A stretch of 64,000 nucleotides of DNA from Octopus bimaculoides (lineage: Eukaryota): the NCBI RefSeq assembly GCF_001194135.2, contig NC_068991.1, forward strand, positions 17,499,882-17,563,881. The letters run 5' to 3'. The notes beneath the pieces are model-generated. The model ran no database searches, had not been told where the DNA came from, and worked only from the letters and a program-made list of their open reading frames with translations. Position 1 is the first letter of the stretch. Each line of letters begins with the position of its first letter. The position numbers and the translations under genes were made by a program. Positions 19,210 through 63,503 of the stretch are shown one piece after another.

Positions 19210-19380
19210 GGCGCAGGAGTGGCTGTGTGGTAAGTAGCTTGCTTACCAACCACATGGTTCTGGGTTCAGTCCTACTGCGTGGCACCTTGGGCAAGTGTCT
19301 TCTACTATAGCCTCGGGCCAACCAAAGCCTTGTGAGTGGATTTGGTAGACGGAAACTGAAAGAAGCCCGTCGTATATATG

Positions 19381-19411
<31 letters not shown>

Positions 19412-25971: not shown

Positions 25972-28448
25972 ACATGTGTATGTGTATGCAATTATGCCTG
26001 TAGATGTGTATTTGATCTTGTATCAGACTACAGCAGATGTTATATTTTTGAGAGGNNNNNNNNNNNNNNNNNNNNNNNNNNNNNNNNNNNNNNNNNNNNN
26101 NNNNNNNNNNNNNNNNNNNNNNNNNNNNNNNNNNNNNNNNNNNNNNNNNNNNNNNNNNNNNNNNNNNNNNNNNNNNNNNNNNNNNNNNNNNNNNNNNNNN
26201 NNNNNNNNNNNNNNNNNNNNNNNNNNNNNNNNNNNNNNNNNNNNNNNNNNNNNNNNNNNNNNNNNNNNNNNNNNNNNNNNNNNNNNNNNNNNNNNNNNNN
26301 NNNNNNNNNNNNNNNNNNNNNNNNNNNNNNNNNNNNNNNNNNNNNNNNNNNNNNNNNNNNNNNNNNNNNNNNNNNNNNNNNNNNNNNNNNNNNNNNNNNN
26401 NNNNNNNNNNNNNNNNNNNNNNNNNNNNNNNNNNNNNNNNNNNNNNNNNNNNNNNNNNNNNNNNNNNNNNNNNNNNNNNNNNNNNNNNNNNNNNNNNNNN
26501 NNNNNNNNNNNNNNNNNNNNNNNNNNNNNNNNNNNNNNNNNNNNNNNNNNNNNNNNNNNNNNNNNNNNNNNNNNNNNNNNNNNNNNNNNNNNNNNNNNNN
26601 NNNNNNNNNNNNNNNNNNNNNNNNNNNNNNNNNNNNNNNNNNNNNNNNNNNNNNNNNNNNNNNNNNNNNNNNNNNNNNNNNNNNNNNNNNNNNNNNNNNN
26701 NNNNNNNNNNNNNNNNNNNNNNNNNNNNNNNNNNNNNNNNNNNNNNNNNNNNNNNNNNNNNNNNNNNNNNNNNNNNNNNNNNNNNNNNNNNNNNNNNNNN
26801 NNNNNNNNNNNNNNNNNNNNNNNNNNNNNNNNNNNNNNNNNNNNNNNNNNNNNNNNNNNNNNNNNNNNNNNNNNNNNNNNNNNNNNNNNNNNNNNNNNNN
26901 NNNNNNNNNNNNNNNNNNNNNNNNNNNNNNNNNNNNNNNNNNNNNNNNNNNNNNNNNNNNNNNNNNNNNNNNNNNNNNNNNNNNNNNNNNNNNNNNNNTG
27001 ATGGTGGTAGTAGTGGTGGTGATGGTGGTAGTAGTGGTGGTGATTGTTTAACCCCCCCCCCCAGGTCAGCACTGACTGAGCAAGCCTACGATCAAATTCA
27101 TTCCAGCCATGACCACCCTGTTTTTAATTAAGATGTAATAAAAGTAGAACCACATTATCTCATGTACTCTTCCTTTTTTAAGAGGGTAGGGTATAACCTG
27201 AGGACTTGGTTATTATTTCTCATAAGTCAGGTGACCATGTAAAACCACCCTCGGCTCACAACAAACATCTGTTGTTTATCCTTAGATTACCCTTGATCAA
27301 GGAGACTGATGATCAAAAGTGTTCCAGTCATGACCATACCATGTTTTTATATCCATGAGCATATTAGCCAGTGAAGATATATGATCTAGTGCAGGGGTTT
27401 TCAAACTGTGGTCAGGCTCATAATCATGAGGTAGTGAGTTTGATTCCTGGACTGGGCTGTGTATTGTATTCTTGAGCAAGACATTTTATTTCACATTTGT
27501 TCCAGTTCATCCAGCTGTAGAAATGAGTTGCAATGTCACTGGTGCCAAGCTGTATCGGCTTTTCCCTTGGATAACATCAGTGACATGGAGAAGAGAGGCT
27601 GGTACACATGGGCAACTGCTGGTCTTCTATAAACAACCTTGCCCGGACTTGTGCCTCAGAGGGGAACATTCTGGGTGCAATCCCAGGGTCATTCATGACC
27701 AAAAGGTTCTTTACCTTTTCTATTAGCCAGTGAAGACATGTGGTCTAGTGGTTAGAGTGTTGGGCTTACACTCATAAAGCCAGAAGTTCTAATCCTTGAC
27801 AGGGTAGCATAGTATCCCTGAGCAAGGCACAATGTTGCCTGTTGCTCCAGTCGACTCAACTGAAAATGAGTACCAGATGACTGTTGGGGGACAGTCCACT
27901 TTCCTTCCAGCTGTCGCATCCTGAATATTTTGCTGGGTCAAAGGTGAGAGGGCTAAGAGTGTGTCTTTGTATGCTTATGACTCCAAAGACATCTAAAACA
28001 AAGATATACTACAAGCCACCAGGTCAATGCTTGTCTCTCCTCCCCTTCTCTAGTCACTCTTGTTGCATCAACTCTACCTTAGGCAATCCACTAATAACTC
28101 TTCTCAGTCCTTCATATCAAGAATTTCCCCCCTCACCCAAACACACCCACACTCAAGAACTCCCTCCTTGTTCATGTCAAGAGGAATGTTATAATGGCAT
28201 CAATTTCAACTGGCTCTGAGGGTCTGCAGAGGGGCCATAGGAACTGTTTTTCCATCAAACCTAGCAAAAAAAAGGATCCACTACGCATTCTAATTTTTTT
28301 TTTTAAAGATAGGTAAGGTGTAATTTAATGGGAATTTGGTTGCTATTTCTATTTCACAGAACTACATGGGAAGTTACTTGCCTTGCATATGTATTTGAAA
28401 GGTTTTGCCAGCAGGTAAACTGCTTATAATTGTGACAATAACGTTTTG

Positions 28449-31347: not shown

Positions 31348-31723
31348 ATCAATGGCACCTGTGCCCAGCATCGCCTTCCTAGCACTTGTGCCAGATGGCA
31401 CGTGTAAAGACATTCGAGCAAGATCGTTGCCAGTCCCGCCAAACTGGCTCCTGTGCAGGTGGCACGTAAAATACACCATTTTGAGCGTGGCTGTTGCCAG
31501 TACTGCCTGATTGGCCTTCGTACCAGAGGCACGTAAAAGCACCCACTACACTCTCGGAGTGGTTGGCGTTAGGAAGGGCATCCAGCTGCAGAAACTCTGC
31601 CAAATCAGACTGGAGCCTGGTGCAGCCATCTAGTTTCACCAGTCCTCAGTCAAATCGTCTAACCCATGCTAGCATGGAAAGCGGATGTTAAATGACGATG
31701 ATGATGATGATGATGATGATGAT
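31348..31723 (+). mobile_element. RTE-tailed SINE-like element (family C) ending in (GAT)n; internal triplicated GGCACGTAAAA motif
   Basis: Matches 11617..11817, 42720..42897, 63225..63503 and decayed 48655..48900. Its tail matches the RTE 3' fragment at 39345..39752. Confidence 0.8.
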
Positions 31724-34411: not shown

Positions 34412-35067
34412 ATAAAGTGTAGTATATTGCCACTTAAGTGTGGCTGACCCCTAGGGGTGGATGTTACTGTTGCTTTTAGCCCCAGGAGGACATCTCCTCC
34501 AGCTGGCTTATCGACACACGACTGTGTCCTGNNNNNNNNNNNNNNNNNNNNNNNNNNNNNNNNNNNNNNNNNNNNNNNNNNNNNNNNNNNNNNNNNNNNN
34601 NNNNNNNNNNNNNNNNNNNNNNNNNNNNNNNNNNNNNNNNNNNNNNNNNNNNNNNNNNNNNNNNNNNNNNNNNNNNNNNNNNNNNNNNNNNNNNNNNNNN
34701 NNNNNNNNNNNNNNNNNNNNNNNNNNNNNNNNNNNNNNNNNNNNNNNNNNNNNNNNNNNNNNNNNNNNNNNNNNNNNNNNNNNNNNNNNNNNNNNNNNNN
34801 NNNNNNNNNNNNNNNNNNNNNNNNNNNNNNNNNNNNNNNNNNNNNNNNNNNNNNNNNNNNNNNNNNNNNNGCTTTTAGCAATAACCCTGAAATCCAGATC
34901 CGTTCGTGCTGCAGATCGTGGTGAGAGGGATAACTTCCCTTGGCAAACAGGACACAGTCGTGTGTCGATAAACCAGCTGGAGGAGATGTCCTCCTGGGGC
35001 TAAAAGCAACAGTAACATCCACCCCTAGGGGTCAGCCACACTTAAGTGGCAATATACTACACTTTAT
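34412..35067. mobile_element. Long-TIR MITE or foldback element spanning a gap
   Basis: 34412-34531 is the reverse complement of 34948-35067 (120 bp, one mismatch seen); centre partly N. Confidence 0.75.
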
Positions 35068-36964: not shown

Positions 36965-37084
36965 CTATGAAAGTAAGAAAATGAGTGATTGAGTAAGGGT
37001 TATTGCTATATGGACTGTTAGATATGTAATTCGTCTGACATTCCGTGTGTCACTGTGGTTCGTCTGAGTTNNNNNNNNNNGGAC

Positions 37085-42719: not shown

Positions 42720-42897
42720 TGGCTCCTGTGCAGGTGGCACATAAAATACACCATTTTGAGCATGGCCATTGCCAGTACCGCCTGACTGGCCTTTGTGCCG
42801 GTGGCATGTAAAAGCACCCACTACACTCTCTGAGTGGTTGGCGTTAGGAAGGGCATCCAGCTGTAGAAACTCTGCCAAATCAGATTGGAGCCTGGTA
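42720..42897 (+). mobile_element. Family C SINE-like fragment
   Basis: Matches the internal part of 31348..31723. Confidence 0.78.
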
Positions 42898-43783: not shown

Positions 43784-43917
43784 ACGTTTTTTCGTTTCTT
43801 TTATTACCTCTGGTTCAACAACAGGATCTGACTGGGAACTGTTTACAGTAAGGATGGGCTTTGCTACTACCACATCTTTATCACTAATGTTATTTTGCTC
43901 CTCTTCGTTGTATGTTG
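43784..43917 (-). CDS. LMO7: LMO7-like exon (134 nt, phase 1 to 0): TYNEEEQNNISDKDVVVAKPILTVNSSQSDPVVEPEVIKETKKR; alternative in-frame donor at 43808
   Basis: Long polypyrimidine tract plus tag acceptor. Donors CGT|gtatgt (43784) and GAG|gtaata (43808). Confidence 0.8.
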
Positions 43918-44215: not shown

Positions 44216-44377
44216 CTCCTCTGAGATATCGTCGGACGCGTAACTCAATTTGCCCATGCTGATTCGCTTTATCAATGATCTGCTGTACCTTCTGTTGTGT
44301 ATGCTGTTGAATGTCTTCTCTATTGATACTAACAATCCTATCCCTTGGTCGAAGCTCACATATATCTGCTGCACTTC
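44216..44377 (-). CDS. LMO7: LMO7-like exon (162 nt, phase 1 to 1): PDZ C-half SAADICELRPRDRIVSINREDIQQHTQQKVQQIIDKANQHGQIELRVRRYLRG
   Basis: Acceptor ctaactgtag, donor GAG|gtaata. GSAA...L...D-x-I-x-SIN pattern is the PDZ alphaA/betaD signature. Confidence 0.92.
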
Positions 44378-45089
44378 CTACAGTTAGACATGGAAATAAT
44401 TGTTAATCATTACAAATAATCAGTGCTAATATTTTGACAACTATATATACATGATGAATCTCACATTGGTTTCAATGAGTACTCCAATCAGTCAATCAAT
44501 AGGACTACATATCACTGTAAGGCTATTCCACTAACCTTGTACCCTTAACCCTTTAGCATTTAAACTGACCACATCCAGGTTTTAGATTCAAACTAGCCTT
44601 GGACAACAAGTCTTAAATTGTGAGTCATGGCCTGGAAGATGGTGATGAATAGGAGAGGACTGAAAACTGAGTACTGATGGGTCCCAACCTGAATACTAAA
44701 TTTGTTAATGAGCTCATTACTAACTCTGCCTCTGTATATGGTTCGCAAGCCATATCTATCTCTGGCTTCTTAGTTTGTATTTGTTTTGGGGTTTTCATTT
44801 AACAAATCTCTTCATATTGTTTCTTTCTTCAATTTTCAAGCATCATGGTGGGATACATCATGTGGCAAGTTAAAATCCAGTGATATTATTAATGATTTAA
44901 TTAGAGAAAGAGAACTTGAATTTGAGAAGATAAAGAGATATATCAATGCCATTTGTTCACATTTTCTGATCTAAGTTATTCTGAATGGAATTTATACCTG
45001 AATTTGAGCAGATACGACAAAGTTGATTCTGAACAGGAATAGAGTGATCAAATTGTTAACCATTGCATCAATGCTTTCATTAGTAATGT

Positions 45090-45400: not shown

Positions 45401-45767
45401 GTGACTGTGATTGTGACATGACAACAGGTAAAAACCACATTTACTAAGTACACTAATTATCATTACATCCTATCTCCAAGTTTTATCCAAGTTCATGCAA
45501 TAGTTATATTTTTATGATTTTTAAACTGCACAATGGCATTTCATCAAAATCTCTAATTTCTAAAAGGATTTATTACAGAGAAAGTACACTGGGAAGTAAA
45601 GAATTAAAAGAATACATTGGATAATGTAGTCAGGAGTTTACAATGTCTGAAAAAAGATGGGATGGTCGTGATTGGAATACTTTTGATCATGGGTCCACTT
45701 GATAGGGGACGGACTTGGAGTTAAACAACAGTAATGACCAAGGGGGATCCAACAGTCAACAACTTAC

Positions 45768-45888
45768 CCAACTCAATCCGATGTACAACAACTGGAGTGT
45801 TTTGATCCACACCACCCCGAATTAAAAACCCAAATCCTTTCTCACTTTTTAACGATTGGCTGATCTTGATTGTCCGCTCAACAAAATC
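45768..45888 (-). CDS. LMO7: LMO7-like exon (121 nt, phase 0 to 1): PDZ N-half DFVERTIKISQSLKSEKGFGFLIRGGVDQNTPVVVHRIEL(G)
   Basis: Acceptor aatattttcag, donor TTGG|gtaagt. GFGF carboxylate-binding loop followed by I-x-GG is typical of PDZ domains. Confidence 0.92.
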
Positions 45889-48238
45889 CTGAAAATATTT
45901 TCAACAACAAAAAAAAAATACTTAGGTCTACAACGAAAAAACAGTAGATACATGACACTACAAGGAAAGCAGCAATTATGTGACAACAATAATGAAGAAA
46001 AGATGGCGTCAAAATAGACGAATGGTTAAGGTGTTGACAGCTGTCATAGAAGAGTCGTGAGTTTATATCCCTCATTGTCATAGATTATGCTGTAGGTATA
46101 ATATTTCATGACTCTCTCTTCTAAATCAAGTCATCAAACCCTTGTCAGTTTGTATAGGTAGTAATAATAAAATAGGTTAATGATGGTTACAGAGGTAGTG
46201 GTGATATTGTAATAGGCACAATGTTGGTGCTTTAGTGATGGCGAATGCAGATGTGGCCTTATAATGGTGATTGTACTGATGATAATGGAGGCTGAAGTGG
46301 GGATGTTAAAATGACAGTAGAAGTCATGGCAGTAGTAGTGTTGAAATGACAGAAGTAATAATAGTAGTGGTGGCAGTTCTCTAGAGGTGGTGTCAAAATG
46401 GTAGCAGTAGTAATATGATAAAGCTGACAATGATGTAGTGGTAGTTGTAGTTGTGGTGTTGAAATATCAACAGTAGTGGTGCTGGTGCTACATTGGTGTA
46501 GTGGAAATGAAGGCTACATGTAACACTCCAGTGGATGTATTAATACAATTATTAAAAAACTATTTCGACTACTACAGCAACATTACTAATATCATAGGAT
46601 GGGTCATAGCTAGACTGCTTTTGATCTTAGGCCTGCTCAGTCAGGGTTTGAATTGGGTTAAAGTACAAGTGACACACTATGTCACTTGTACTTATTTTAA
46701 TAGCACCAACACTGGAGGAGACATTAAGGAATAGATATACAAGGATTGACTTTAGTTCTAGGAAAAAAGGAAAACACAAAGCATGGCCTCTGGATAGAGA
46801 GAGCAGAGTATGGCAGCTATTATTAGTAGCACTATGTCACCATGTTAAAGAGGATTCAAAAATTATTCTTATGTGTGATGGTTACATAGAGAGGTTCCAC
46901 GGGCAGACCATCTCAGCAAATGATTGAGGATTTTCAGGATTTTGTTGAGTGAGGTCATGTTTTGTACGTTTACCTTACCGTAGGACCAAACTCCCTAAAT
47001 TCATAATCAACTGTAACTCAAGGGACATCTACCTTCGAAAGGCTGGCTAGGCTTCATATACTGAGATAAACATTGAATACGATGAGTAAATTGATCAAGA
47101 AGAAAATAGAAAGAAGAAAAATCTCAGGACAGAAAAAGAGGAATAACAGAAAACTCAAACAAATAAAACATATGAAGGCTAAAGCAGTTGATGGCTACGG
47201 TAGAATGGGGACTAAGCAAGTTGAAGTCTCTGTCTGAGAAGGTTAAGAGACAGCTGAAGGCTCTGCTATGATGGTTGAAGATTAAGCCCGAAGAAACGTA
47301 AAAGAGTTAAAGGCTCTGACAAAGAAGGCTAAGAGAAATGAATGCTCTGAAAGAAGAAAACAAAGATAAAAAAAACAAACAGAGGAAGAAAAGAAAAGAA
47401 GACTCAGATTGAAGAAGAGGGAGGAGGAGGAACTAGAGGAAGAAAAGGATTACTGATTTTATCGAGTTTTAGTTTTCTTCCAGATACGTGCCAGACAAAT
47501 ATTGTGGTAAGGTTTCACAGGTAGATAGAACACTTTTAGACAAAGCCTCAAAGTCTTGAAACAAAATGAAAAAGGATAATAAAAAACCCACTCCATTATC
47601 TTCAACATCCTCTTTTGTTTCCATTAGGGGTAATCTACAATGTAAGAGAAGTGATGTACTCAATACTGGACGATCTGCTCTTGTTATTGATTCTTGTCTG
47701 TTGCAACGTCGGCAGCTTTGTTAACTCTGTTTCATCCAGCTAGATCCTTATTAAACTCCTGATCCTTAGATTAATTACATACTGTCATTAAAACATTTAT
47801 GATTTCAAAAGTGATAATCAGAACAGCACATAATTACAGCCACAACATCTACAACTAAATGTCCTATTAAAACCGTAACAACAAACACCATAAAGGCAAT
47901 TGTAATAGAACAGAAATTTAGTACAACCACCACCACTACCACTACCACCACAACCAACATCATTGTCACAACCACACTGATCACCAAGACAACCATGATG
48001 ATAGCCACTACTACCACTACAGTTATCATTACCATTGTCATACCACCATAACAACAATCAACAACCTGAATAACTTACTCTAACCACCACCACCACCACC
48101 ACCACTACCTTACTACACTATAGTTGGATTACACAAGATAAAAAAATCACCTATAATGCTGTACTGATCAACACTTATACTATGCCTGAGCACCAATCAA
48201 CCAATTTGACCCTATCCCCACCTCCACACATGTATGTA

Positions 48239-48290
<52 letters not shown>

Positions 48291-49850
48291 CTGTGGTGGC
48301 ACAGCTGTTTCTAGCCCTAAGTTGAATGGTGCTCTGTCACACAATAGAAAACAATATTTGACTTGAAAACAAACAAGAAAAAAAAAAAAAACAGAAAGAT
48401 CAAGAGGGAATGTGACTGCATGAAAGTTTTGTTCAAAATTTACATGCTAACAAATAACTCTGGGGAGGAGTTTAATCAATAAAATCAACTTCCAGACATG
48501 ACTGGTATTTTATTTTATTGACCATGAGAGAATGAAAAGCAAAGTTGGCTTCAGTGGGATTTGAACTCAGAACAGAGCCAGAAACACCTGTCACCAAGCA
48601 TTTGGTACAACACACTAATGATTCTGCAATAATTAATAATAAAAGTTACTTGATGACCCTGCCAGTGCTGATGCCACATAAAATGCATCCAGTCCACACT
48701 GTGAAGTAGTTGGCATTTGGAAGGGCATCCAGCTATAAAAACCATGCCAAAACTGACCTCATTTTGCTGGTGCCACGTAAAAAGCACTCAGTCCACTCTA
48801 CAGCGAGGTTGGTGTTAGGTAAAAACCATGCCGAAACAGACACAGTAGCCTGGTGTAGTCTTCTACCTGGCCAGTTCCTGTCAGACCATCCAGCCCATTC
48901 TATATGTATATAGATATATGTATATATATATGTAAATATAGATATGTGTATATATCTATGTATATATATGTAAGCAACAAACAGATGTATTAATTTAACG
49001 TTCAGGAAGTGAGAAAGTGTTTTATGTTTCAGTCCTACGCTCTTCAACAGAAAGGAACACAGAAATAAACAAAGAGAATAAAAAATGTTTAGTGGCTAGC
49101 AATCAATCATGGCGGATAGACTTAGAAGATAACTAGCTGAATACCTGTCTGTCCTGCTTAATTTAAGGAAATACTTTCCTGTCATCATGGTAATTGGAGA
49201 GTGGTATGCTGTAGCTTTACATTTTTTTAATATTTTAAGATTTTTCTCTATCTTTGTATTGTATTTCAAATGCGTAGTTGTCTATCAAGTGACTTGATCA
49301 GAAGCTGTGTGTTGAAACTGAAGCAATTGCATCATAAAAAGGAACCAAGCTAGTCATTTAATAGACACACAAAAGCTATTAAATTCACTTTAAATTCATT
49401 TCATGCGCTACGAAAATTTTCATTGCACAACTATGACCTGGTCACTGAAACAGGTCCACTGCAAGGTGTTGCACTGGGACTATGCTAGTGACCAGCTTGG
49501 AGTTCTGTGATAAAAATTTCAACAGTTCATGAAATATATTTGAAGTGAATTTAATAGCTTTGTCTGTTTATTAAATGACTAAATTTGCTACATTTCATAA
49601 TATAGTTGTGTCATCAAATTATAATCTCCTGATATATGAGTTGACTTTAGTTTAATAAAGTCCAACATACATGTAAAATATCATTAATTTTAGGTTTCAC
49701 TTATACTTTTTTAAGTCAGTTTTTGTTTTTAACATGTTTATCACTCTGTCGTTTTAAATTTCTTTTAGATACACCCATATACATATATATATTGCTCCAG
49801 CATGACCACAGCCTTATGGGTGAAATATGTAAAAGAACAAAGAATATATA

Positions 49851-50744
49851 TGAGTTCTGATCAATAAGTATCCGGACTATCACCATAGGAATGAAGCTAA
49901 AGCACACAGAGTAAAGCCACTTGGCACAGATTAACCTTCAGCTCTGCTGTGCATGCACACTAAGTTTTAACATTCTAGCTCATCTCCGCTGTTTACAGCA
50001 GTGCTTAGAAGGAAGGTGTGTAGTGTGTGAGCATCACATTGACCATGACAGAGAAAGTTGTCATGGCGATACCTACTCAGTGGCCTACGCAAAGTTGCAG
50101 AAAGTGTATGGAGAGGAGTGTACGAGCTGCACACAAGTGTGCGAATGGTTCAAACGTTTCCATGATGGCCGAAAAAATGACAATATTGACACACATTCTG
50201 GGAGACCTGCAACCATCAGAACTGAGAAAAACATTGCAGATGTGCATGCAGCTGTGAGTGGGAAATCGTTGAATCACCATCCATAAGTGATCAGAGGATG
50301 TGCAGATTAGTTATGTTTCAGTTCAATTCATTATCACTGAAGACTTGGGTACGAGATACATGTCTGCCAAGTTTGTGCCAAAACTGCTTTCAGCAGACAT
50401 CAAAAGTACACTTGGGTTTCACTTGCACAAGATCTTCTTGATGGTGTTGAGAATGATGAAAACTTTTTGAAAACTTTCTGTAGGCCTCTGAGTAGGTATT
50501 TCCAAGCTTTGGGCAAAATTTGATGCAGATTCTCTGCTCAACTTTTTCTGTCATAGTCAATGCGATGATCACACACTACATACCTTCCTTCCAAGCATTG
50601 TTGTAAACAACAGAAGTGAGCTAGAACATTAAAACTTAGTGTACATGCACAACAAAGTTCAAGGTCAATCAGTGCCAAGCAGCTTCACTCTCCATGTTTT
50701 AGCTTCATTCTTGTGATAATAGTCCGGATACTTATTGATCATCG
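49851..50744. mobile_element. Non-autonomous mariner derivative made of two inverted 5' ends
   Basis: TIR core TGATCAATAAGTATCCGGACTAT at both ends. Plus arm encodes the HTH region (...KLQKVYGEEC...EWFKRFHDGR...HSGRP...EDLGTRYMSAKFVPKLLS) with frameshifts; minus arm encodes MTEKVEQRICIKFCPKLGNTYSEAYRKF. Confidence 0.85.
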
Positions 50745-53700
50745 TGTTGAATTATATATACAAATGTATAAAAATAGGAGATGAAAGGAACAAATAGGGA
50801 AAGTGAAATACCATGCTACACAAATGCCAGAACAAGCAAAAAAACCTGACTAGAACAAAAGGAATATATCAAAATTCATCTACAAAGACTATAAGCATAT
50901 GAACCCATGCAGGAATGTTAGGTGTGTGTATTTATACATGCATATATGTATATGTATGTGTGTGAATTGTATGGAGGAAGGTTCACTCAATATATGTGGA
51001 CACAACCGTCACTGAATGATTTACAGGAATGCTTTGAGATCATGAAGACCTGTGTTCAATTCTTCTGAGGAGCACTTGGGTAAATGTGTTCTCCTGTTAC
51101 CCCAAGTTAACACAAACCTTGTGAGTGAAATTTAATACATGAAATTTATATGCTAGCCTGTTGGCTGCAGAGTACCTGTAATTCAAAGGGCCTGTCTTAT
51201 CACATGGATTCTGCCTGAAGATTACATTCCAGGTACAAGTGTACATGGGAAACATTTGCTTCTGTCATTCAATGAGTAGATGATTCAATTGATGAAACAA
51301 CTGGAAAACACTGTTGAAACTAATGGAGGGTCAGTTTAATATATATATGTGTATATAATGAAACACAAAATATATATATGGCAGACAAGCACTTGAAAAG
51401 GATCAAGGCATCTTAAAAAACCTTCAAAATGTTATCTTGGAGCTACAGTCAACACACATACCTGACCCATGTTACATCATTCACCAATCTTTCAAAAGAA
51501 AGATGGCTCTCTCTGTCCATTTATCTCCTTTTTTTTTTCATTCTTCCTTCTCTCCAGTGATACCTGGTGAAGAAGTAAACTAACCATTGCCCCCAACCTT
51601 TTACAGTTTTGTAGCTCACCACAAAACCTTTTTTGGCATTGGAGTGAAGCAGAAACAGAATTGTTGCCAAAGGTTGGCAGCAAGAGGATAATCCCACATT
51701 GAATTTTGCCAATAGCCTTACCTATGCTAAATTTGGTAGCATTTGTTTGACACAAATGGTTCATCAGTTCATTTTGTTATAAATAAATGCAAATGCTGAT
51801 GGGAAAAAAACTCTACGCAGTCACTAGATCTGTGAAAAGTAGCAGCTATGTTTCATTCAAATCACATGACTTTTGCAAAAAAGAACATATTGGATAATGT
51901 AGTCCTAGATACACTATGACTAAAAAAGACAACAATGTTGGAAAATATTCTGCTATATGTCAGCACAATCAAGAATAATTTGGGGCTAAGCAATAACAAC
52001 AAATTCATGCAAAAGTTTAAATTTGCATAACTGCCTAATCTACATTAACATGATCAAAGGCTTATATATATATATATATAACAGTACATGTTATGCTAAA
52101 AGGTTAAAAACAAAAACAAACAAAAAGAAAGAAAACAAATGGATGCAGTGTAAGTTAAAAACAATTGCAAAAGATGTGAAATAAAAAAAAACAATAACAA
52201 ACACAACACATAAAACAAGAAAGCAACTAACTGCATGGTTATGTGATACATCAGCCACTACAGAAATAACAAGATCAACAGAACTTTTAAGAAGCAGTGG
52301 AAACCTACAAGGCTACAACACTGCACAACTCCTGCAATTCCAACTATGAAAGAAAAGAAGTTCACATCCTTCTTACTTCACTGGCATCAGGGTAACAGAA
52401 ACAGAAAATAAGAATCTGATTTAATTTAGTAAAATTTATCTTCCAAAAACATTTCATTGAAAATTTGACTGGCATCAGTAAAAGAGAACTATAGTGATCC
52501 CATAACTGTTGTGTGGTTCACAATCAGGCCTTGCAATGTTGCTTATGCACACCTTGGCTGAATGACAGAAGGTTGCACTATTATTTTCCCCTCGTCTTGC
52601 ATTCTCTCCTCTCTCTTCTGTCAACTGTGCACTCTTCTAAATCATAACATCCTATCATCTCCCCACCATCTCTGCTAACCGTATCATTCTCATGACTCCT
52701 CACCATTTTGACCCTCGCCCTTCATAGGTCTAAGAGATAGCATCAAACCACCTTCATTCTTCTGTCCAACACACAATAGTTTCACTTCTCTATTGTACAT
52801 CCATCACTCTTTCCCCTCTAGGTCACCTCCATTGCTACCTAATACCTACTCATACCTTTATCTGATCCCTTCTAGGCCACTACTGTTGCCACCCATCACC
52901 TCTGTAAAGTGGTTGGCCATAGAAAGGGTATCCAACCACAGAAACTGAGTCAAATGACACATCTAAGCACCACTCTATGGAAGCAGTGGCTTATAATCAC
53001 AGGTGACTCAGACTAGGAGGGTCCTGCCAACGCATGAAAAGTGGACATAAAATGATAATGACAATGCAGCAATGTGTCCTATTACACAAGCAACTGTTAC
53101 AAAGAAATGAAATGTCAGCAGTTGCAAAACAAAAAAAAAAGCCATAGATGAAATGGTCTTTTATAGATTTTGAAGAATTTTTTTTTATGCCTATGTTTTC
53201 TTTTACAGCTAAACACTTTTGTTACATACCATTAATCCATTCACTGTTATGTGCAAGGTGCAGATGGAAACTATTGCCATCCAGAGACATTCAGAGTTAT
53301 GTCCCTTGCCTAAAGTTGCAACAACTATTAAATTTAATAGTTCAATACAAAGTTAAAATTCATTATGCATCAAATATGTAATAATGAATTGTTGGTGAGT
53401 CAGCTCCTTCACAATCCATAGTTGCTAGCAGCACTATGTAATAGTTGAAACAATATAGTTGATGAGTTTATACATCTTATGGTGAAACAAGCCACTGTTT
53501 AAAGACTACAATATATACATTCTTTACCAACAATATATTCACCTACTACTTGATGATCTTCCCAACAAAAACTGACCATACAACTAGTTTTCACCAATCA
53601 AAATAGAGCAAAACCCCTATACATAATGCATACATTGTTGTAACTTAGGAGATAAACTGCTGCTAAACTAAATTTACAACCCAGGTTGAATTTCTAGTCA

Positions 53701-55559
53701 AAAATATTGCAACTTAACTACATTAATGATTTTGCAAGAAGTATGAACAATAACATTGGTAGCCAATAAAGCTAATTACCACAGGGAGAGATCTCTGATC
53801 TCAAAAGATGAAGCAATTGATAGCATACCAAACTACTGCCTGGATAGATAAATATAGAAATAGCTTCAAATTCATTTTGTCATTTTGTCCTAAATTCTGA
53901 TTTAAATAATTTCAGATTTTAGCTCCATTTACTATTGTATGAAGCAGATGGATGGATATGTCCCGAGACATAGCTCTAGTCTGAACTCATGTAATTTATT
54001 CAAGAAAGCTTGATATATCTGGCCTACAAATGAGTGAACATGAGTACATAGACTGAATTGTCCTGTACAAAGACACACTAAAATGCTAGAAGATATGTAA
54101 TATGTATATGATATAATATGAACAAGTGATAGTCCAATACTTTATCCACTGATGTATTCTACTATTAGTTCCACTCTTCTAAACAGAATAATTATCTATT
54201 CGGTCATTAAAAAAAAAGAGATAAAGATCAAGAGATTTCATCTAAGTTATAGTGCAAATGGTGATCCTTTGTTATTTCATCATGTTGGCAAAATAGCTGT
54301 CAGCAATATTCTTAAAACTTGAATAAATAGCTTTAAACACATCTAGGTGTCTTTGATGAGTTGCTTTTAATAAAATTATAGTTTTTCATATGGTTAACCT
54401 CATCATTAGAAATTAAAATATTTCTATTTGCATTTACACTATGTTTTGATCAGCACATAGAGATACCTGGTGGATAAGAACCTTATTAACCTTGATTTGG
54501 AAATAAAGGTTCTTAGTTCAAATGGTTGGTGCTATGCATAAACTCAAGAATAAGACCTTTGATGATAAATGAGAAGCAAACTAATTGAAATAGTATAGAT
54601 TTGCATAAATTCTAGCTCAAACATACAGGTTCATGATGCTGGAGCTTATCTGAATTTCAGATACTTTAGGCAACTGGAAGTACAAAACCTCCACTCTAAA
54701 TGGGATGTCAATCCATCACAGGGTCAACCCACAGCTCAAGACCAAATATTTGCTTCAGTTGCTTGATCATGGCCACTTGAGCATGTCTCTTAGAGGCTGA
54801 TAATATGTGCATCTCTGATCATGGGCAGGAGTGCTGGAGTAGCATCATAGCCCTGTGTTGAGAGGGATTCTTTGGTGTTTGAATAAATGTAACAAAAGCA
54901 AAGTTTGAAGGAAGTATTAGCTCTTTTTCATACCTTACTCAAAGAGCACATGATACTGCTTAGTCCAAGACACAAATCCACAATGAGCCTAACATCCTAA
55001 CTAGTAGACCACGGGTTTTCAAATGGATATACATAGCACGGATTATACTATCGTCAAACACAATAAACATTTGCTTACATGTACCAAATAATTTACAGTT
55101 TAAATTTCAGCTATTTTTCAAAAGATGTTTCTGTTACCTGAGGTGAGCAAAGAAAGATGGGACAAAAAAAAGTCACACAAGAACAAAGGAATTAATTTCT
55201 TACTACCATCTTACCTCACACTCATCTTTAATCCATCCTTCATCAGTTTCAGAAGAATCAACCTTTAGGAAAAACAAAACTGACACAAATAAAACCCTTG
55301 CTGCATGTCACCAACATCCAGCTGCATTTTACTAATTAGGATTCTTGTGGGTTTTGTTGTTGTTTTTTATTACTTTTCCTAATGTGACTTTCCTAATGTC
55401 GGTAGTCATGAAATCTCCACTTAGTTCTTTAACTTTATCCTTTCCTTTTAAGCTGTCTAGCTCCCTTGCATTTACTAAGATTTTCTTTAGAATCAAATAG
55501 TTGCATCTGTGCACATGTTTGTATGTATAAACATACATACAAGTGTGTATCTATCGATC

Positions 55560-55592
<33 letters not shown>

Positions 55593-55609
55593 TTACACAT
55601 TCATATTCT

Positions 55610-55990
55610 TTTTTTCTTTTATTTGTTTCAGCCATTTGACTGCGGCCATGCTGGAGCACAGCTTTTAGTCGAACAAATCAACCACAGGACTTCTTCATTG
55701 TAAGCCTAGTACTTATTCCATCGGTCTCTTTTGCCGAACTGCTAAGTTACAGGGACGTAAACACACCAACATTGGTTGTCAAGCAATGGTGGTGGTGGGG
55801 GGGGGGCAAACACAGACACACAAACACACACATACGACGGGCTTCCTTCAGTTTCCATCTACCAAATCCACTCGCAAGGCTTTGGTCGGCCTGAGGCTAT
55901 AGTAGAAGACACTTGCCCAAAGTGCCACGCAGTGGGACTGAACCATGTGATTGGTAAGCAAGCTACTTACCACACAGTCACTCCTGCACC
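55610..55990 (-). mobile_element. SINE family A copy (inverted)
   Basis: Reverse complement of the family A head and tail motifs. Confidence 0.85.
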
Positions 55991-57169
55991 TTGATATAAA
56001 TACACAGATACATTGTCCCTATTTTCTATAGAGAGGCACTAATGTTAAATCATCCTGAAGATAAGACTAGAGTTCTAGAAATGTTACAGAAAGATTTAGG
56101 AAATTTATGGTTCTAAACACTGTTAGAGCACATATGAAATTCTTTCTAAAAAATTTTATGAAAAAAGTAAATAAAACCAGAACACTTGTAATTTCAATGC
56201 AGAATGTCTGGATGAGTCACAGACCCTGTCCCTAATTTCCACCAGGTAAGGAACAACTTAAAAATGGAAAAGTTAGTTTACTAAACTCCTTCAAATTCTT
56301 ACCTATTTTCAAATTATTTCAAATGATCCATCCAGCCACACACACACACACACACAAGTATGCATACATATTTATGAATATATCTTTCTATAAACACGTG
56401 TGTATAACAGACAGACACACACACACACAACATACACAGATATGTGTGTAGATTTATTCTTCATGAGTGGCCAAAACCTAGTATAGGCTGAAGAATGACA
56501 AGTGACGTAGATAAAAAAAAAACATACTTCCACCAAAATGAAAAAGTTATTTACTTTACTAAACTCTTGATTATTTTTCTAATTGTTTCGTATGAAAGCT
56601 AGATAGTGTATTTCCTTAGAAGTTTAAACATCAGCATCAAAAACTACTACCACCAAGATTATTCTAATAACACTGTGCAATGAAATTTTAATATTTTTTT
56701 GTCTTTGATCAGTAAGTATAATTTCGTATTTGCTTCTACCTAGAAATCAAAGAAAATGATTACTATTCCCCTTCAACTTTGCTTTTGTGACCTGGACATC
56801 AATGTTTAGAAACCGACCTATTTTCCATTACATTTCAGACAAATCCAGTACTGGGTACTGAGTAGTGGCTGACAATATGTGCGTCTCTGATCACGAGTAT
56901 TGGGGGAACATCATAGCCATGTGTTAAGAGGGGTTTATTTGGAGTTTGAATAAATGAAACAAAAGCAAAGTTTGAAGGAAATATTAGCCATTTTTCATAC
57001 TTTCTATGGGGTAAGCAAATAGGAAATAATAGTTGCTATCCAAGGACATAAATCATACTACACAGTGTAATTACTGTTTCCTCTTTTGACTTCACTTAAC
57101 CTCCATTCCAGGTTTACATTTTCATACAGTCACAATCAAGTTGACCAACAACGATTTTACTTAACCTAC

Positions 57170-57742
57170 CTTATCAGGTCTTGGAGAAGAAACCCTCTCC
57201 ACTGGAGCAGATGAAATGTTGGAGCTGCTTTTCAGCTCATTGCTTTTGGATTGATGAGGCAGTTCGTTCTGCAATACCTGTTGCTGCTGTCTTCTTCGGT
57301 TGTCTGGTGGTGGTGGTGATGATGGAGGTGGTGGCACTAATGAAGGAAACTCCACTGAGGGCAGCGGTTGTTGCTTCTCCTCCAGTCTTGCAGTTTGTTC
57401 GATGTTCTTCAAGTTGTTTGCTTCAACATCATTCTTTGTCCTGGGGCTCCTTACACTCTCAACACTTTTCACCTCTGACTGTTTCAACACTGGTTCTTCT
57501 GTCGTGTTGGCTGCAAACACGTCATCTTCGAAATTGTCGGTGGTGTTGTTATCGTTCTTGTTGCTAGTGGCATTGTTGTTGTAGTTGCCACTGATCCTGT
57601 TGCTTCTGTTGTTCTTGCTGTTGTCTTCGATGGTGTCACTTTTTTCCTTCTTTATCACAGTGTTATCACGTTTGGGGCTGATCGATGTTTGTGACACTGT
57701 TGTAGCATCACCTTTTCTCGAAACATTTTCATTTTGGAAACT
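57170..57742 (-). CDS. LMO7: LMO7-like exon (573 nt, phase 0 to 0): low-complexity N/S/P/Q-rich region SFQNENVSRK...SSPRPDK
   Basis: Contains ORF 57161..57697. Acceptor tttcatttgacag, donor AAG|gtaggt. Confidence 0.85.
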
Positions 57743-59267: not shown

Positions 59268-60140
59268 GTGCACCTGTATGCTGTGTTGCATGTCTGTATG
59301 GGATGTTGCGTGTATCTGTATGGTATGTTGCGTGAATCTGTATGGTATGTTGCGTGTGTCTGTATGGTATGTTGCGTGTGTCTGTANNNNNNNNNNNNNN
59401 NNNNNNNNNNNNNNNNNNNNNNNNNNNNNNNNNNNNNNNNNNNNNNNNNNNNNNNNNNNNNNNNNNNNNNNNNNNNNNNNNNNNNNTGTTGCGTGTGTCT
59501 GTATGGGATGTTGCGTGTGTCTGTGTGGGATGTTGCTTGTGTCTGTGTGGGATGTTGCTTGTGTCTGTATGGGATGTTGCATGTGTCTGTATGGGATGTT
59601 GCGTGTGTCTGTATGGTATGTTGGGTGTGTCTGCATGGGATGTTGCATGTGTCTGTATGGTATGTTGCGTGTGTCTGTATGGTATGTTGCGTGTGTCTGT
59701 AAGGTATGTTGCGTGTGTCTGTATGGTNNNNNNNNNNNNNNNNNNNNNNNNNNNNNNNNNNNNNNNNNNNNNNNNNNNNNNNNNNNNNNNNNNNNNNNNN
59801 NNNNNNNNNNNNNNNNNNNNNNNNNNNNNNNNNNNNNNNNNNNNNNNNNNNNNNNNNNNNNNNNNNNNNNNNNNNNNNNNNNNNNNNNNNNNNNNNNNGT
59901 GCCTGTATGGGATGTTGCGTGTGTCTGTATGGTATGTTGTGTGTGTCTGTATGGTATGTTGTGTGTGTCTGTATGGTATGTTGGGTGTGTCTGTATGGTA
60001 TGTTGCGTGTGTCTGTATGGGATGTTGTGTGTGTCTGTATGGTATGTTGCGTGTGTCTGTATGGTATGTTGCGTGTGCCTGTATGGGATGTTGTGTGTGT
60101 CTGTATGGGATGTTGTGTGTGTCTGCATGTTATGCTGTGT
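59268..60140. repeat. 22-bp minisatellite, consensus TGTTGCGTGTGTCTGTATGG(T/G)A, interrupted by two gaps
   Basis: Tandem units read directly from the sequence; they explain the C/V/Y-rich ORFs 59163-60294. Confidence 0.92.
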
Positions 60141-60274: not shown

Positions 60275-62540
60275 CTGAAAATATAGAAGCATAAAAAAAA
60301 TTAAAGACGAGTGGTAGAAATATTCAATGAGAAATGTTCTTCCAATTGTCTTGAATAACACCAGGTGCAAATTCACATTGGATAAAAATTAAAATACACA
60401 AACAGGAAGATAAAGATTTGGGTACAAATTGAAGTTTTATTAAGTGGCTGATGGAGTGGTTCACTAATTTGTGCCTGAAGATAGAAGAGACACCAATGTC
60501 TTCAAGAATATATTTTATATTTTTTTTATCTTTTAGCTTATACTCGTTTCAATCATTGGATTGTGGCCATGCTGCAGCATCAACTTGAAACATTTAGATG
60601 AACAAGTTGGTCTCAGAGCTTATTTTTTAAGTCTGTTACTTATTCTATCAGTTACTTTTGTTAACCTACTAAGCTACAGGAATGTAAACAAACCAACACT
60701 AGTTGTCAAGCATCACACACACACACACACACACATGAAGGGCTTTCACACAGGTTTTGTCCAACAAATTTTCTTACAAGATCAGCTGAACGGTGCCATA
60801 CAGTGGAATTGAACCAACAACCACATGGCTGCAAGGTAAGCTTCTTAACCACAAGGCCAGGTCTATGCCTATGTTTATTAAGACTCAGATATTATTTTTA
60901 CAAAATTTTAAATACAAACATCTGTGCTTGTTCAAATTTCACCAAAGTCAACTTGGCAGTTCATCCCTCCAAGGTCAATAAATAATGTAGCAGTCAAAAA
61001 ATATCGGGATCAATGATATCAATGAATGCTTCTCAAAATTGCTTGCCTTGTATCACATCTGATTTTACTTACACTGAGGTTGGTCAAGAGTCCTAGGACT
61101 CATATGGCTAGAGCTTAACCCAGTTTCTACGGTGTGTAAGTGACTGAGATTGCAACACACCACACCTGGGCAAGATGCCAGTCTGTCAAATGGCCAACTT
61201 CCCAGTTACTGCTGAAGCTAACTCACAGCTGAGTAAAGTGGAGTAACATGAAATGAAGTATTTTTCTCAAGAGCACAATATGCTGCCCCTTCAAGAAATT
61301 GAAACCATAATCTTACAATCATGAGTGCAACACCCGAACCACTAGGTCACATGCCCTCTCTATCTAATACTAACCCCTCCAAAAAATTTAATGAGTAAAA
61401 ATAAAATGTAATTTTTTTCAATACATATGCTGTCATTATTTGAATGTACTTTGCACTGCTTACTATTATTACAAAGCACTAATATCTGAAAGAATTATGT
61501 TGCTATGTAGCAATACATGTTAATATTGTTTTCTATAGCAGTTCATTTCTTAGCCTAATCCTTATAGGATTTCATCTTTTATTATATAATCTACAGATCA
61601 GTCAGCATATGACACATTGAGCATATGACATACTGGTCGCAAATAACTTACTGCAAAGCAAAATTGAAAGAAGAAAAGGAAACACCTACATAGGAATGTA
61701 TGCTGAATAATCATTGATAAGTTGGTAGTTTCAAAACAAGCAACCAAAAGTAATAAAAATAGTGGCAATTGTTTGGTGCTTTCGTACATGGGATGGAGGG
61801 AGAATGAGGGGGAAAAGGTGCACAAGGAAATAAGGGCATAGTAAACACATTTATAGATAGTCAACTGAAGAGGTTTTGATTTTGAGTTATGAAATAAAAA
61901 CAAGAAAAATTGAAGCAATTTCACAAATTGTCAGATTGTTACAAAACAAATATTAGTGTGTTGTGGTTTCCGGGGCAAACCACAATCCACTAAACCAAGC
62001 CCCTCTTGAGGGGCTTAAGGGTTAATCAATTCCTTAGACCCCAAAACTTGTCTGGTGCTTTATTTTATTTACAGGAGAGGAACAAAAGGCAAAGCTGACT
62101 CTCGCAAGATTATTACCATTAATACCAACATAAAATAAAAAACAACAAAGTTCATTTCACAACCATTTTATTTCAGGCTCAATTCCAATGCACAACAGTT
62201 TGAGCTAATGTCTTTTGTAACAGACCTGAGCTGACCAAAGCCTTGTGAGTGAAATATAATAGATGGAAACTATACAGAAGCCTATAAGAACAGTTCATGT
62301 TCTTGGGTGAAAGACTAGTTTAACATTAACAGTTGGCTGATGACCTTTGAGTGTTTTTAACATGGCCCACTCTGTTGCTAGAATTTAGGACAGCTCTCTG
62401 GTTTGAAGATAATTTCCATATTACCATCCTTCCTCTCTTTGGTCATGGAGCCCCAAGATAAGATAATGGATGTTGCCATTCTTTCTCTGGGTCATGTATA
62501 AAAAATAAATAAATGAATAACAAGTAGAAGTAATATTTAC

Positions 62541-62665
62541 CTGTCTTCAACCATTTCTTTGAAAGTCTTCACAGAACGTTTAGTTACCTGAGACGTCTCA
62601 TCTGGCTCTTCAAGTGCTGATAGAGACTTCCTACTCTGTCTCCGAAACTTCCAGGAAGCAAGGTT
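62541..62665 (-). CDS. LMO7: LMO7-like exon (125 nt, phase 0 to 2): NLASWKFRRQSRKSLSALEEPDETSQVTKRSVKTFKEMVED(R)
   Basis: Acceptor ttgcttgcag, donor AG|gtaaat. W-K-x-RR...KTF-x-EM-x-E motif resembles the DUF4757 region of LMO7/LIMCH1/Smallish (recognised from memory). Confidence 0.85.
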
Positions 62666-63224
62666 CTGCAAGCAATATGTGAAGATAATCATTAAAGACA
62701 GCAACATCAGTGATGAAAATGAGAGTGAAACAGGCTAAACATCTAGCTGAATTTAAGTACGTCTCTTTTATGCTCCCGTTTCAAATTATACTGAAGAGGG
62801 CAGAGTCAACACTGCCTTTCATCTTTCCAGATTCAATAAAACTATGTACCAGTCATATGATAGGGTTGATATTTATCAAAAGGATGTGCTATAATACTAT
62901 TCCACATATACAAAAACAGCCATACCACCAATCCAACATACCTCCATCATCAGCTGCCCCACTGATATCACTATTGTTTCGACACCTGGGCAGTACCATT
63001 CAATCCGGTGGTGTCAAGAGCACTAAAATAAGTGTTGTTTGAGAACAAACATACCAAAGAAACCACAACTTTCAAACACATTTACCCTGTGTACAACCGT
63101 ATCAGTAAATAAATTCAATAAGTAAATCACAACCAACTCTAAAATACGTAACTAAACAGCAACCAATCCATTTAGTCATAGAAAAATTATATTCCCTACC
63201 ATCTTCCATAGTATAATATGTTGC

Positions 63225-63503
63225 CTTCCTGGCACTTGTGCCGGTGGCATGTGTAAAGACATTCGAGCGAGATTGTTGCCAGTGCCGCTGGACTGGCTCC
63301 TGTGCAGGTGGCACGTAAAATACACCATTTTGAGCGTGGCCGTTGCCAGTACCGCCTGACTGGCCTTCATGCCGGTGGCACGTAAAAGCACCCACTACAC
63401 TCTCGGAGTGGTTGGCATTAGGATGGGCATCCAGCTGTAGAAACTCTGCCAAATCAGATTGGAGCCTGGTGTAGCCACCTGGTTCACCAGTCCTCAGTCA
63501 AAT
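63225..63503 (+). mobile_element. Family C SINE-like copy, cut by a gap
   Basis: Near-identical to 31348..31723. Confidence 0.8.

What the first reader, a model, noticed from the sequence alone, without database searches (positions are those of the whole stretch)
45877..46949. Perfect 20-nt intronic antisense copy of the PDZ exon 3' splice site
Seen: plus 46930-46949 (ATTTTCAGGATTTTGTTGAG) is the exact reverse complement of plus 45877-45896. In the minus-strand pre-mRNA the intronic element can pair with the last 8 intron nt, including the AG, and the first 12 nt of the PDZ exon, about 1.03 kb downstream. Neither segment belongs to a repeat I recognised. Established: long-range RNA pairing can control splice-site choice (Dscam docking sites), and intronic editing-complementary sequences direct ADAR, which is very active in coleoid cephalopods. 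Inference: a structural switch that masks or edits this acceptor and controls PDZ inclusion. Skipping the 121-nt exon alone shifts the frame; skipping the block 45888-43784 (417 nt) stays in frame.
Basis: partly seen in the sequence, partly recalled or inferred. Interest (0 to 1): 0.75.

Follow-up and report, generated by a model that had tools for sequence, protein, structure and literature searches.

The report
Inverted 20-nt copy of splice acceptor
A 20-base stretch spanning the start of a PDZ-domain exon really is repeated, perfectly and in reverse, about 1 kb upstream in the same intron; it looks most like a small DNA copying accident, and although it could mask that splice site in the RNA, no available evidence shows that it does.

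Summary
Plus 46930-46949 is the exact reverse complement of 45877-45896. That segment covers the last 8 intron nt (including the AG) and the first 12 nt of a 121-nt PDZ exon on the minus strand, and 1,033 nt separate the arms. It is not chance within this window: simulations give 0.014 such 20-mer pairs per window at any distance, and none within 1.1 kb in 500 runs. It is the only exact repeat of 18 nt or more here with no flanking similarity. The predicted 20-bp duplex (-27 kcal/mol) appears in the minimum-energy fold.

Three features point to a DNA-level copying event rather than an evolved RNA helix:
- The pairing is entirely Watson-Crick.
- Its edges are abrupt.
- A 5-bp direct repeat (TGAGG) brackets the intronic copy.

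I read it as a young templated inverted insertion (template switch, MMBIR or Pol theta type). Acceptor masking or ADAR recruitment is physically plausible but untested. No cephalopod genome, RNA-seq or genome-wide count could be reached, so conservation, editing and exon skipping remain open. Dscam-type competition, snoRNA, miRNA and repeat-family explanations within the window were tested and not supported. Interest is modest.

The parts
46930..46949 (-). Intronic arm. In the minus-strand pre-mRNA it reads CUCAACAAAAUCCUGAAAAU, antisense to the acceptor junction. It is the putative 20-nt templated insertion.
   Evidence: Exact reverse complement of 45877-45896. No flanking similarity. No Rfam family. 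Only a weak local hairpin: -12 kcal/mol, z -1.8.
45877..45896 (-). Acceptor arm: the last 8 intron nt (AUUUUCAG) plus the first 12 exon nt (GAUUUUGUUGAG) of PDZ exon A. It is the presumed template of the copy, because it is constrained by the splice site and coding sequence.
   Evidence: The local RNA here is otherwise unstructured (z +0.95).
46925..46929 (.). Left copy of the 5-bp direct repeat TGAGG that immediately flanks the intronic arm.
   Evidence: Read directly. In this window, identical 5-mers at this spacing occur at 0.2% of positions.
46950..46954 (.). Right copy of the 5-bp direct repeat TGAGG. The arm itself ends in TTGAG and the left flank reads TTGAGG, which is microhomology-like.
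45768..45888 (-). PDZ exon A, 121 nt, phase 0 to phase 1. It encodes DFVERTIKISQSLKSEKGFGFLIRGGVDQNTPVVVHRIEL, followed by the first base of a Gly codon. The donor is TTGG|gtaagt.
44216..44377 (-). PDZ exon B, 162 nt. It encodes (G)SAADICELRPRDRIVSINREDIQQH...ELRVRRYLRG.
   Evidence: Boundaries are inferred from the sequence only.
43784..43917 (-). Exon C. It is 134 nt with the donor CGT|gtatgt at 43784, or 110 nt with the donor GAG|gtaata at 43808. Both are in frame.
   Evidence: No transcript evidence.
57170..57742 (-). Putative upstream exon, 573 nt, encoding a low-complexity linker. It ends AAG|gtaggt in phase 0 and so matches exon A. The intervening intron 57169..45889 is about 11.3 kb, if no exon lies in between.
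   Evidence: No Pfam domain.

Best explanation
The intronic arm is most likely a young, short templated insertion made at the DNA level. During replication or break repair, a nascent strand in the intron switched to a template about 1 kb away on the opposite strand. It copied 20 nt across the acceptor of the first PDZ exon and returned 5 nt behind its point of departure, which duplicated TGAGG. This is the template-switch, MMBIR or polymerase-theta type of event. The result is an inverted perfect copy with abrupt edges.

Shown:
- the exact inverted copy;
- the absence of any flanking similarity;
- the flanking 5-bp duplication;
- the thermodynamic capacity of the two arms to form a 20-bp helix over the AG.

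Inferred:
- the direction of copying (exon junction to intron), because the exon arm is constrained;
- the young age;
- the lack of selected function.

When transcribed, the two arms are predicted to pair. The helix would hide the AG and the first 12 exon nt from U2AF35 and the spliceosome, and it is about the minimum length for an ADAR substrate (my own knowledge, not checked here). I take any such effect to be a by-product. I put a measurable effect on splicing or editing at roughly one in three, and an evolved switch at roughly one in seven to ten.
For: - The 20/20 match is exact and local alignment of +/-120 nt flanks adds nothing. There are no G-U pairs or bulges, as expected from DNA copying rather than RNA-level selection.
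- It is the only orphan exact repeat of 18 nt or more in the window.
- It is far above chance for a pair about 1 kb apart.
- The copy is bracketed by TGAGG on both sides and ends in TTGAG next to TTGAGG. The background frequency of such 5-mer flank identity is 0.2%.
- Inverted templated insertions of 10 bp or more with junction microhomology or microhomeology are a documented germline mutation class (PMC8421209).
- Template switching is known to create perfect hairpin stems in one step (PMC5453318 and PMC8794818).
- No RNA family, snoRNA or miRNA signal lies at either arm.
- No second complementary site exists in the window.
Against: - The template is 1,033 nt away. The described short template-switch and MMB-TI events are defined with templates within about 100 bp.
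- There is no outgroup or population data, so the insertion cannot be polarised. The empty site AATGAT-TGAGG-TCATG is hypothetical.
- I found the TGAGG duplication after looking for a signature, so its 0.2% background overstates its weight.
- A neutral model does not predict that the copied segment should be a splice acceptor. Only about 1% of window positions lie at coding-exon junctions (my estimate).
- Perfect identity is also what purifying selection on a helix would give.
Confidence: 0.55

Rival explanations
1. Evolved cis-regulatory helix. The intronic arm pairs with the acceptor in the pre-mRNA to mask the AG, or to recruit ADAR. The acceptor A at 45890 sits centrally in the duplex in a C-A-G context. 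This would tune productive against frame-shifted splicing, or recode the first exon codons (GAU, GAG).
For: - Duplex energy is -27.1 kcal/mol. It is in the MFE (18 of 20 pairs) with pair probability of 0.45-0.93.
- Removing the arm costs about 21 kcal/mol of MFE in a comparable construct.
- Size, energy and spread fall within those of validated human long-range splicing helices: 13-20 nt, -15 to -36 kcal/mol, 51-9431 nt (PMC8052449).
- Splice-junction editing sites exist in squid: 444 of 214,017 genic sites (PMC9068888).
- The acceptor is otherwise unstructured.
- The coincidence with an acceptor is improbable under neutrality.
Against: - No conservation, editing or isoform evidence could be obtained.
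- The helix is perfectly Watson-Crick with abrupt ends and a flanking duplication, the mark of a recent DNA copy.
- There is no competing partner that would make it a switch.
- Skipping the 121-nt exon alone shifts the frame.
- In the squid study, editing is enriched in coding and 3' UTR sequence relative to introns, which gives no precedent for an intronic guide; 20 bp is marginal for ADAR (my own knowledge).
Confidence: 0.15
2. Pure coincidence. The two 20-mers match by chance in an AT-rich genome.
For: - The 20-mer is AT-rich (14 of 20).
- It turns up 18 times in unrelated metagenome contigs, sharing only 20-26 nt.
- Across a whole large genome a few tens of local 20-nt inverted pairs are expected (extrapolated).
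- The first stage may have read many windows.
Against: - Expected about 5e-4 per window within 1.1 kb: 0 of 500 simulations, and 0.014 at any distance.
- The orphan-repeat length distribution stops at 17 nt apart from this pair.
- The flanking TGAGG duplication is unexpected under chance.
Confidence: 0.12
3. Both arms are fragments of an unrecognised dispersed repeat or common genomic motif. Under this reading the acceptor itself derives from, or resembles, a repeat.
For: - The window is rich in SINE-like and other repeats.
- Diverged copies of one family lie on both sides of exon A: 45651-45731 and 46587-46667.
- No cephalopod repeat library or genome-wide count was available.
Against: - No third copy in 64 kb, even at 3 mismatches.
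- Similarity ends exactly at 20 nt on both sides, unlike every repeat-derived pair in the window.
- The neighbouring repeat copies are in direct orientation and do not include the arms.
Confidence: 0.1
4. Assembly artefact in a draft, gap-containing assembly.
For: - The window has 12 runs of N.
- At least one suspicious 99%-identical inverted pair abuts a gap at 34412-35067.
Against: - The nearest gaps are at 37071-37080 and 59387, several kb from either arm.
- A 20-nt segment embedded in unique sequence on both sides is not a typical misjoin.
Confidence: 0.03

Closest known systems
Templated inverted insertions and short template-switch mutations (MMB-TI/MMBIR, Osia et al. 2021, PMC8421209; Loytynoja and Goldman 2017, PMC5453318; Monttinen and Loytynoja 2022, PMC8794818)
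   Same: - A short (10 bp or more) perfect reverse-complement copy of nearby sequence.
- Abrupt boundaries.
- Short direct repeat or microhomology at the junctions.
- Creates a perfect RNA/DNA stem in a single step.
   Different: - The template is 1,033 nt away rather than within about 100 bp.
- The ancestral (empty) allele has not been observed.
- Junction microhomology can only be guessed from the derived sequence.
Long-range pre-mRNA helices that regulate splicing (PCCRs; ATE1, PLP1, DNM1 and others; Kalmykova et al. 2021, PMC8052449)
   Same: - Intramolecular complementarity of 13-20 nt.
- Energy of -15 to -36 kcal/mol.
- Arms hundreds to thousands of nt apart, within an intron and next to a splice site.
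- A helix that occludes a splice site.
   Different: - Those are defined by conservation, and often by compensatory substitutions or mutagenesis. None of that is available here.
- Here the helix is flawless, with no wobble pairs, and shows an insertion-like signature.
Dscam1 docking-site and selector-sequence system
   Same: An intronic element complementary to a sequence near an acceptor, acting at kb range.
   Different: - Dscam needs one docking site competing for many selectors in front of a cluster of mutually exclusive exons.
- Here there is one pair only and no exon cluster.
ADAR editing-site complementary sequences (GRIA2 Q/R; GluR5/6 Q/R with a distant intronic ECS, Herb et al. 1996, listed in PMC9479739; ADAR2 self-editing that creates an acceptor)
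   Same: Intronic sequence pairing with an exon or junction at up to kb distance. Editing can make or destroy an AG acceptor.
   Different: - Known ECS helices are longer and imperfect, and are defined by observed editing.
- No editing data exist here, and 20 bp is near the lower limit for ADAR (my own knowledge).
SNORD115 (HBII-52) 18-nt antisense element against the HTR2C exon Vb splice region (from my own knowledge, not checked here)
   Same: An antisense stretch of about 18-20 nt over an alternative splice region, also linked to editing.
   Different: - SNORD115 acts in trans from a C/D-box snoRNA.
- No snoRNA features or Rfam hit are found at this arm.

Membership tests
Templated inverted insertion / template-switch mutation | The inserted segment is the exact reverse complement of a nearby sequence, with no similarity beyond it | tested here: met
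   20/20 exact match. Flank alignment adds 0.
Templated inverted insertion / template-switch mutation | Template lies close by (within about 100 bp in the MMBSearch and yeast definitions) | tested here: not met
   The arms are 1,033 nt apart. The definition is in PMC8421209. Broader MMBIR/FoSTeS has no such limit.
Templated inverted insertion / template-switch mutation | Microhomology or microhomeology, or a short duplication, at the junctions | tested here: inconclusive
   TGAGG lies on both sides and the arm ends TTGAG beside TTGAGG. The background is 0.2%. This was found post hoc and the ancestral sequence is unknown.
Templated inverted insertion / template-switch mutation | Absent from the ancestral or outgroup allele | not testable with these tools
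   No cephalopod sequence was reachable.
Conserved long-range splicing helix (PCCR type) | Complementarity of 10 nt or more, dG of -15 kcal/mol or lower, both arms in the same pre-mRNA within 10 kb | tested here: met
   20 nt, -27.1 kcal/mol, 1,033 nt apart. Both arms lie on the minus-strand transcript between the inferred exons.
Conserved long-range splicing helix (PCCR type) | Evolutionary conservation or compensatory substitutions | not testable with these tools
   No orthologous introns were available.
Conserved long-range splicing helix (PCCR type) | Demonstrated effect on splice-site use | not testable with these tools
   Needs RNA-seq or a minigene.
Dscam-type docking/selector competition | One docking site with several competing complementary selectors in front of alternative exons | tested here: not met
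   Only two occurrences of the 20-mer at up to 3 mismatches in 64 kb. No duplicated PDZ exons.
ADAR substrate with intronic ECS | Stable dsRNA containing the target adenosines | tested here: met
   The 20-bp helix is predicted in the MFE and the ensemble. This is a prediction only.
ADAR substrate with intronic ECS | A-to-G differences between RNA and DNA at the paired adenosines | not testable with these tools
   No reads available. The editing supplement I wanted (PMC5499236) is not held.
snoRNA or miRNA antisense guide | Match to a known family, or a significant local precursor fold with box motifs | tested here: not met
   The permissive Rfam scan shows only a chance-level hit (E 3.2) at the arm. 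Local folds have z of -0.6 to -1.8.
PTPN3/PTPN4 (FERM-PDZ-phosphatase) gene | PDZ domain closest to the PTPN3/4 PDZ | tested here: met
   Best PDB hits are the PTPN4 and PTPN3 PDZ domains, E 4e-11 to 1e-10. The next family is at 7e-8.
PTPN3/PTPN4 (FERM-PDZ-phosphatase) gene | FERM and tyrosine-phosphatase domains in the same gene | tested here: inconclusive
   No HCSxG, WPD or NRY motifs in minus-strand ORFs of 28 aa or more in the window. The upstream exons have no Pfam domain, apart from a sub-threshold DUF4757 hit. These domains may lie outside the window.

The most novel reading that the evidence does not exclude
A one-step templated insertion created a functional cis-acting helix over the acceptor of the first PDZ exon of a PTPN3/4-like gene. 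In neurons with high ADAR or helicase activity the helix is edited (AG to IG at the acceptor, or Asp/Glu to Gly in the first codons) or unwound. The insertion would then act as a newly born, tissue-dependent switch between productive mRNA and a frame-shifted, decay-targeted isoform. This would be a caught-in-the-act example of mutation-driven origin of long-range RNA regulation in a cephalopod.
Probability: 0.1. Interest if true: 0.65.

Novelty: new member of a known kind. Interest (0 to 1): 0.3.

Why it matters
If the arm is simply a templated insertion, it is an ordinary mutation. It would then be a clean natural example of a single DNA copying slip producing a strong long-range RNA helix over a splice site.

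If it turned out to be conserved or to change splicing or editing, it would link two things directly. One is template-switch mutagenesis. The other is the birth of splice-masking or ADAR-guiding structures in a lineage known for heavy RNA editing. It would also give a simple disrupt-and-rescue test system. At present only the sequence fact and the thermodynamic potential are established.

Tried and rejected
- **Orthologue or transcript retrieval.** The protein search with the 132-aa PDZ peptide found nothing. The metagenome scan for relatives found nothing. Ten window ORFs are not in the protein collection. Conservation therefore could not be tested.
- **20-mer in metagenome contigs.** There were 18 hits, all unrelated and sharing only 20-26 nt. 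This says nothing about the host genome.
- **Repeat membership within the window.** Self-BLAST of both arm regions finds other repeats nearby, but none includes the arms.
- **snoRNA, miRNA or other known RNA.** The permissive Rfam scan and local folds were negative.
- **Dscam-like competition.** There is no further complementary site.
- **circRNA-type flanking inverted repeats.** Rejected, because one arm is the acceptor itself and not the downstream intron.
- **Gene identity beyond the PDZ.** Pfam on upstream exons and intronic ORFs gave nothing above threshold.
- **Editing-site supplement.** Liscovitch-Brauer 2017 is not held.
- **Accessibility comparison.** A wild-type against scrambled or deleted arm comparison was started, but the script machine was lost. 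I substituted a truncated fold.

Full report
**1. Observation**

The window reads ...atgattgagg ATTTTCAGGATTTTGTTGAG tgaggtcatg... at 46930-46949. It reads ...gtccg CTCAACAAAATCCTGAAAAT attttc... at 45877-45896. The two 20-mers are exact reverse complements. A search allowing 3 mismatches finds only these two sites in the 64 kb.

On the minus strand the lower site reads ttgttgttgaaaatattttcag|GATTTTGTTGAGCGGACA... It therefore covers the last 8 intron nt, including the AG, and the first 12 exon nt. The arms are 1,033 nt apart.

**2. The gene**

- *Exon A.* The minus-strand exon 45888..45768 is 121 nt, with donor TTGG|gtaagt. It encodes DFVERTIKISQSLKSEKGFGFLIRGGVDQNTPVVVHRIEL.
- *Exon B.* Runs 44377..44216 and is 162 nt.
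- *Exon C.* Starts at 43917. Its donor is at 43808 or 43784.
- *Domain.* The three exons together give a PDZ domain: Pfam PF00595, E 9.5e-13. Its closest solved relatives are the PDZ domains of PTPN4 and PTPN3, at E 4e-11 to 1e-10.
- *Frame.* Exon A alone is out of frame.
- *Upstream exon.* A 573-nt low-complexity exon (57742..57170) ends AAG|gtaggt in phase 0. It fits exon A's phase-0 start.
- *Intron.* It is about 11.3 kb, and the antisense arm sits 1.03 kb upstream of the acceptor.
- *Acceptor position.* The AG at 45890-45889 is the only AG between an in-frame stop codon and the PDZ coding sequence, so the acceptor position is well founded by sequence logic. No transcript evidence was available.
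- *Limits.* FERM and phosphatase exons were not found in the window, so the PTPN3/4 assignment rests on the PDZ alone. The organism could not be verified with the tools at hand.

**3. Is it more than chance?**

- *Simulation.* In 500 third-order-Markov simulated windows, inverted exact 20-mers at any distance of 50 nt or more occurred 0.014 times per window. None occurred within 50-1100 nt.
- *Orphan census.* I counted exact repeats with no flanking similarity in the real window. The inverted counts were 13, 9, 5, 2, 0 and 0 for lengths 14 to 19 nt, and then this one pair at 20 nt.
- *Other local inverted repeats.* Seven other local exact inverted repeats of 18 nt or more exist, and all sit inside long imperfect inverted repeats. 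The focal pair gains nothing from its flanks.

So the pair is real, non-random for this window, and unique in kind within it. The caveat is scale. Extrapolated to a multi-gigabase genome, a few tens of such local pairs are expected by chance, and perhaps 0.25 of those would fall at a coding-exon junction.

**4. Anatomy that bears on origin**

The intronic copy is bracketed by an identical 5-mer: TGAGG at 46925-46929 and again at 46950-46954. The copy itself ends in TTGAG, next to a left flank that reads TTGAGG. Identical 5-mers at this spacing occur at 0.2% of positions in the window.

Three features are what a single DNA-level copying event leaves: perfect Watson-Crick identity without wobble pairs, abrupt edges, and a short flanking duplication.

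A simple model fits the observed sequence, step by step:
- A nascent plus strand reaches ...GATTGAGG.
- It switches to the exon-junction region as template.
- It copies 20 nt, ending in ...TTGAG.
- It re-anneals 5 nt behind its departure point. There the original reads ...TGAT, which gives a TGA match with a terminal mismatch.
- It continues, and so duplicates TGAGG.

Inverted templated insertions of 10 bp or more, with junction microhomology or microhomeology, are a described germline mutation class (PMC8421209). Template switching is known to create perfect stems in one step (PMC5453318 and PMC8794818).

The misfit is distance. Those classes are defined with templates within about 100 bp, whereas here the distance is 1,033 nt. 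Without an outgroup, the direction and age of the event are inference.

**5. What the RNA could do**

- *Stability.* The isolated duplex is -27.1 kcal/mol, or -32.4 with a few flanking pairs.
- *Folding in context.* In folds of 1.2-1.8 kb of pre-mRNA, 18 of 20 pairs are in the minimum-energy structure. Mean pair probability is 0.45-0.93.
- *Without the arm.* A construct that stops just short of the arm folds 21 kcal/mol less stably.
- *Local competition.* The acceptor region has no significant local structure (z +0.95). The intronic arm has only a weak local hairpin of -12 kcal/mol.
- *Comparison with proven cases.* The helix lies within the range of validated long-range splicing helices: 13-20 nt, -15 to -36 kcal/mol, 51-9431 nt apart (PMC8052449).
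- *What it would cover.* It would hide the AG and the first 12 exon nt but leave the U-run at about -21 to -30 free.
- *Editing targets.* The adenosine with the best sequence context for editing, by ADAR neighbour preferences as I recall them, is the acceptor A itself (C-A-G, central in the helix). The two exonic A's follow G, which is disfavoured.
- *Precedent.* Splice-junction edits exist but are rare in squid: 444 of 214,017 genic sites (PMC9068888).

All of this is potential, not evidence of use.

**6. Alternatives tested**

- No Rfam family lies at either arm.
- There is no miRNA-like or snoRNA-like local fold.
- There is no further complementary site that could compete as in Dscam.
- No repeat family in the window includes the arms.
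- The nearest assembly gaps are several kb away.

**7. What could not be done**

- No cephalopod genome, transcriptome or editing table was reachable.
- The 20-mer's 18 metagenome hits are unrelated.
- The script machine failed before a scrambled-arm accessibility comparison could run.

**8. Verdict**

The best-supported reading is a young templated inverted micro-insertion that happens to copy a splice acceptor (confidence about 0.55). It has a real but untested capacity to mask or mark that acceptor. An evolved regulatory switch remains possible (about 0.1-0.15). It would be settled by an orthologous or allelic empty-site test and by RNA-seq. This is a new instance of known kinds of things, both mutational and structural, and interest is modest until function is shown.

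Noticed in passing
34412-34531 and 34948-35067: 120-nt inverted repeat, 99% complementary. Its inner ends abut the N gap 34532-34870. It may be a real palindrome or foldback, or an assembly artefact at a gap.
   Followed up: partly
49858-50060 and 50539-50741: 203-nt inverted arms, 84% complementary and 478 nt apart. It looks like a foldback or long-TIR element in an intron.
   Followed up: no
about 8423-8803, 12316-12700, 19215-19641, 1096-1352 (direct); 55850-55977 (inverted); also 31443-31660, 42720-42896, 63292-63503, 11617-11768: At least two SINE-like repeat families with many copies. They account for nearly all long exact repeats in the window.
   Followed up: partly
45651-45731 and 46587-46667: Two diverged copies (63-76% identity) of the same repeat, which matches 27270-27349 in reverse. 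They lie in direct orientation on either side of PDZ exon A and are unrelated to the 20-mer arms.
   Followed up: partly
43784 / 43808 (minus strand): Exon C has two plausible donors 24 nt apart: GAG|gtaata and CGT|gtatgt. Both are in frame, so this may be an alternative 5' splice site adding VIKETKKR.
   Followed up: no
45890-45903: A perfect 14-nt palindrome, TGAAAATATTTTCA, overlaps the acceptor arm and the end of the intron.
   Followed up: no
about 59291-60125: Tandem array of a 22-nt unit (GTGTGTCTGTATGGKATGTTGC), interrupted by N gaps. It creates long spurious ORFs on both strands.
   Followed up: no
62537-62707 (minus): The ORF ...NLASWKFRRQSRKSLSALEEPDETSQVTKRSVKTFKEMVEDR gives a sub-threshold Pfam hit to DUF4757 (E 0.026, 15.2 bits against a cut-off of 27). 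From memory, DUF4757 is an LMO7/LIMCH1-type region, which I did not check. The gene might therefore not be a PTPN3/4 orthologue despite the PDZ similarity.
   Followed up: partly
14370-14449 (+): ARAGORN calls one tRNA-Met (CAT). It may be a real tRNA gene or a tRNA-derived SINE head.
   Followed up: no
44593-44798 (minus): An intronic ORF contains ...YSVFSPLLFITIFQAM..., which from memory resembles a reverse-transcriptase motif of LINE elements. Pfam gave no hit, so this is unconfirmed.
   Followed up: partly
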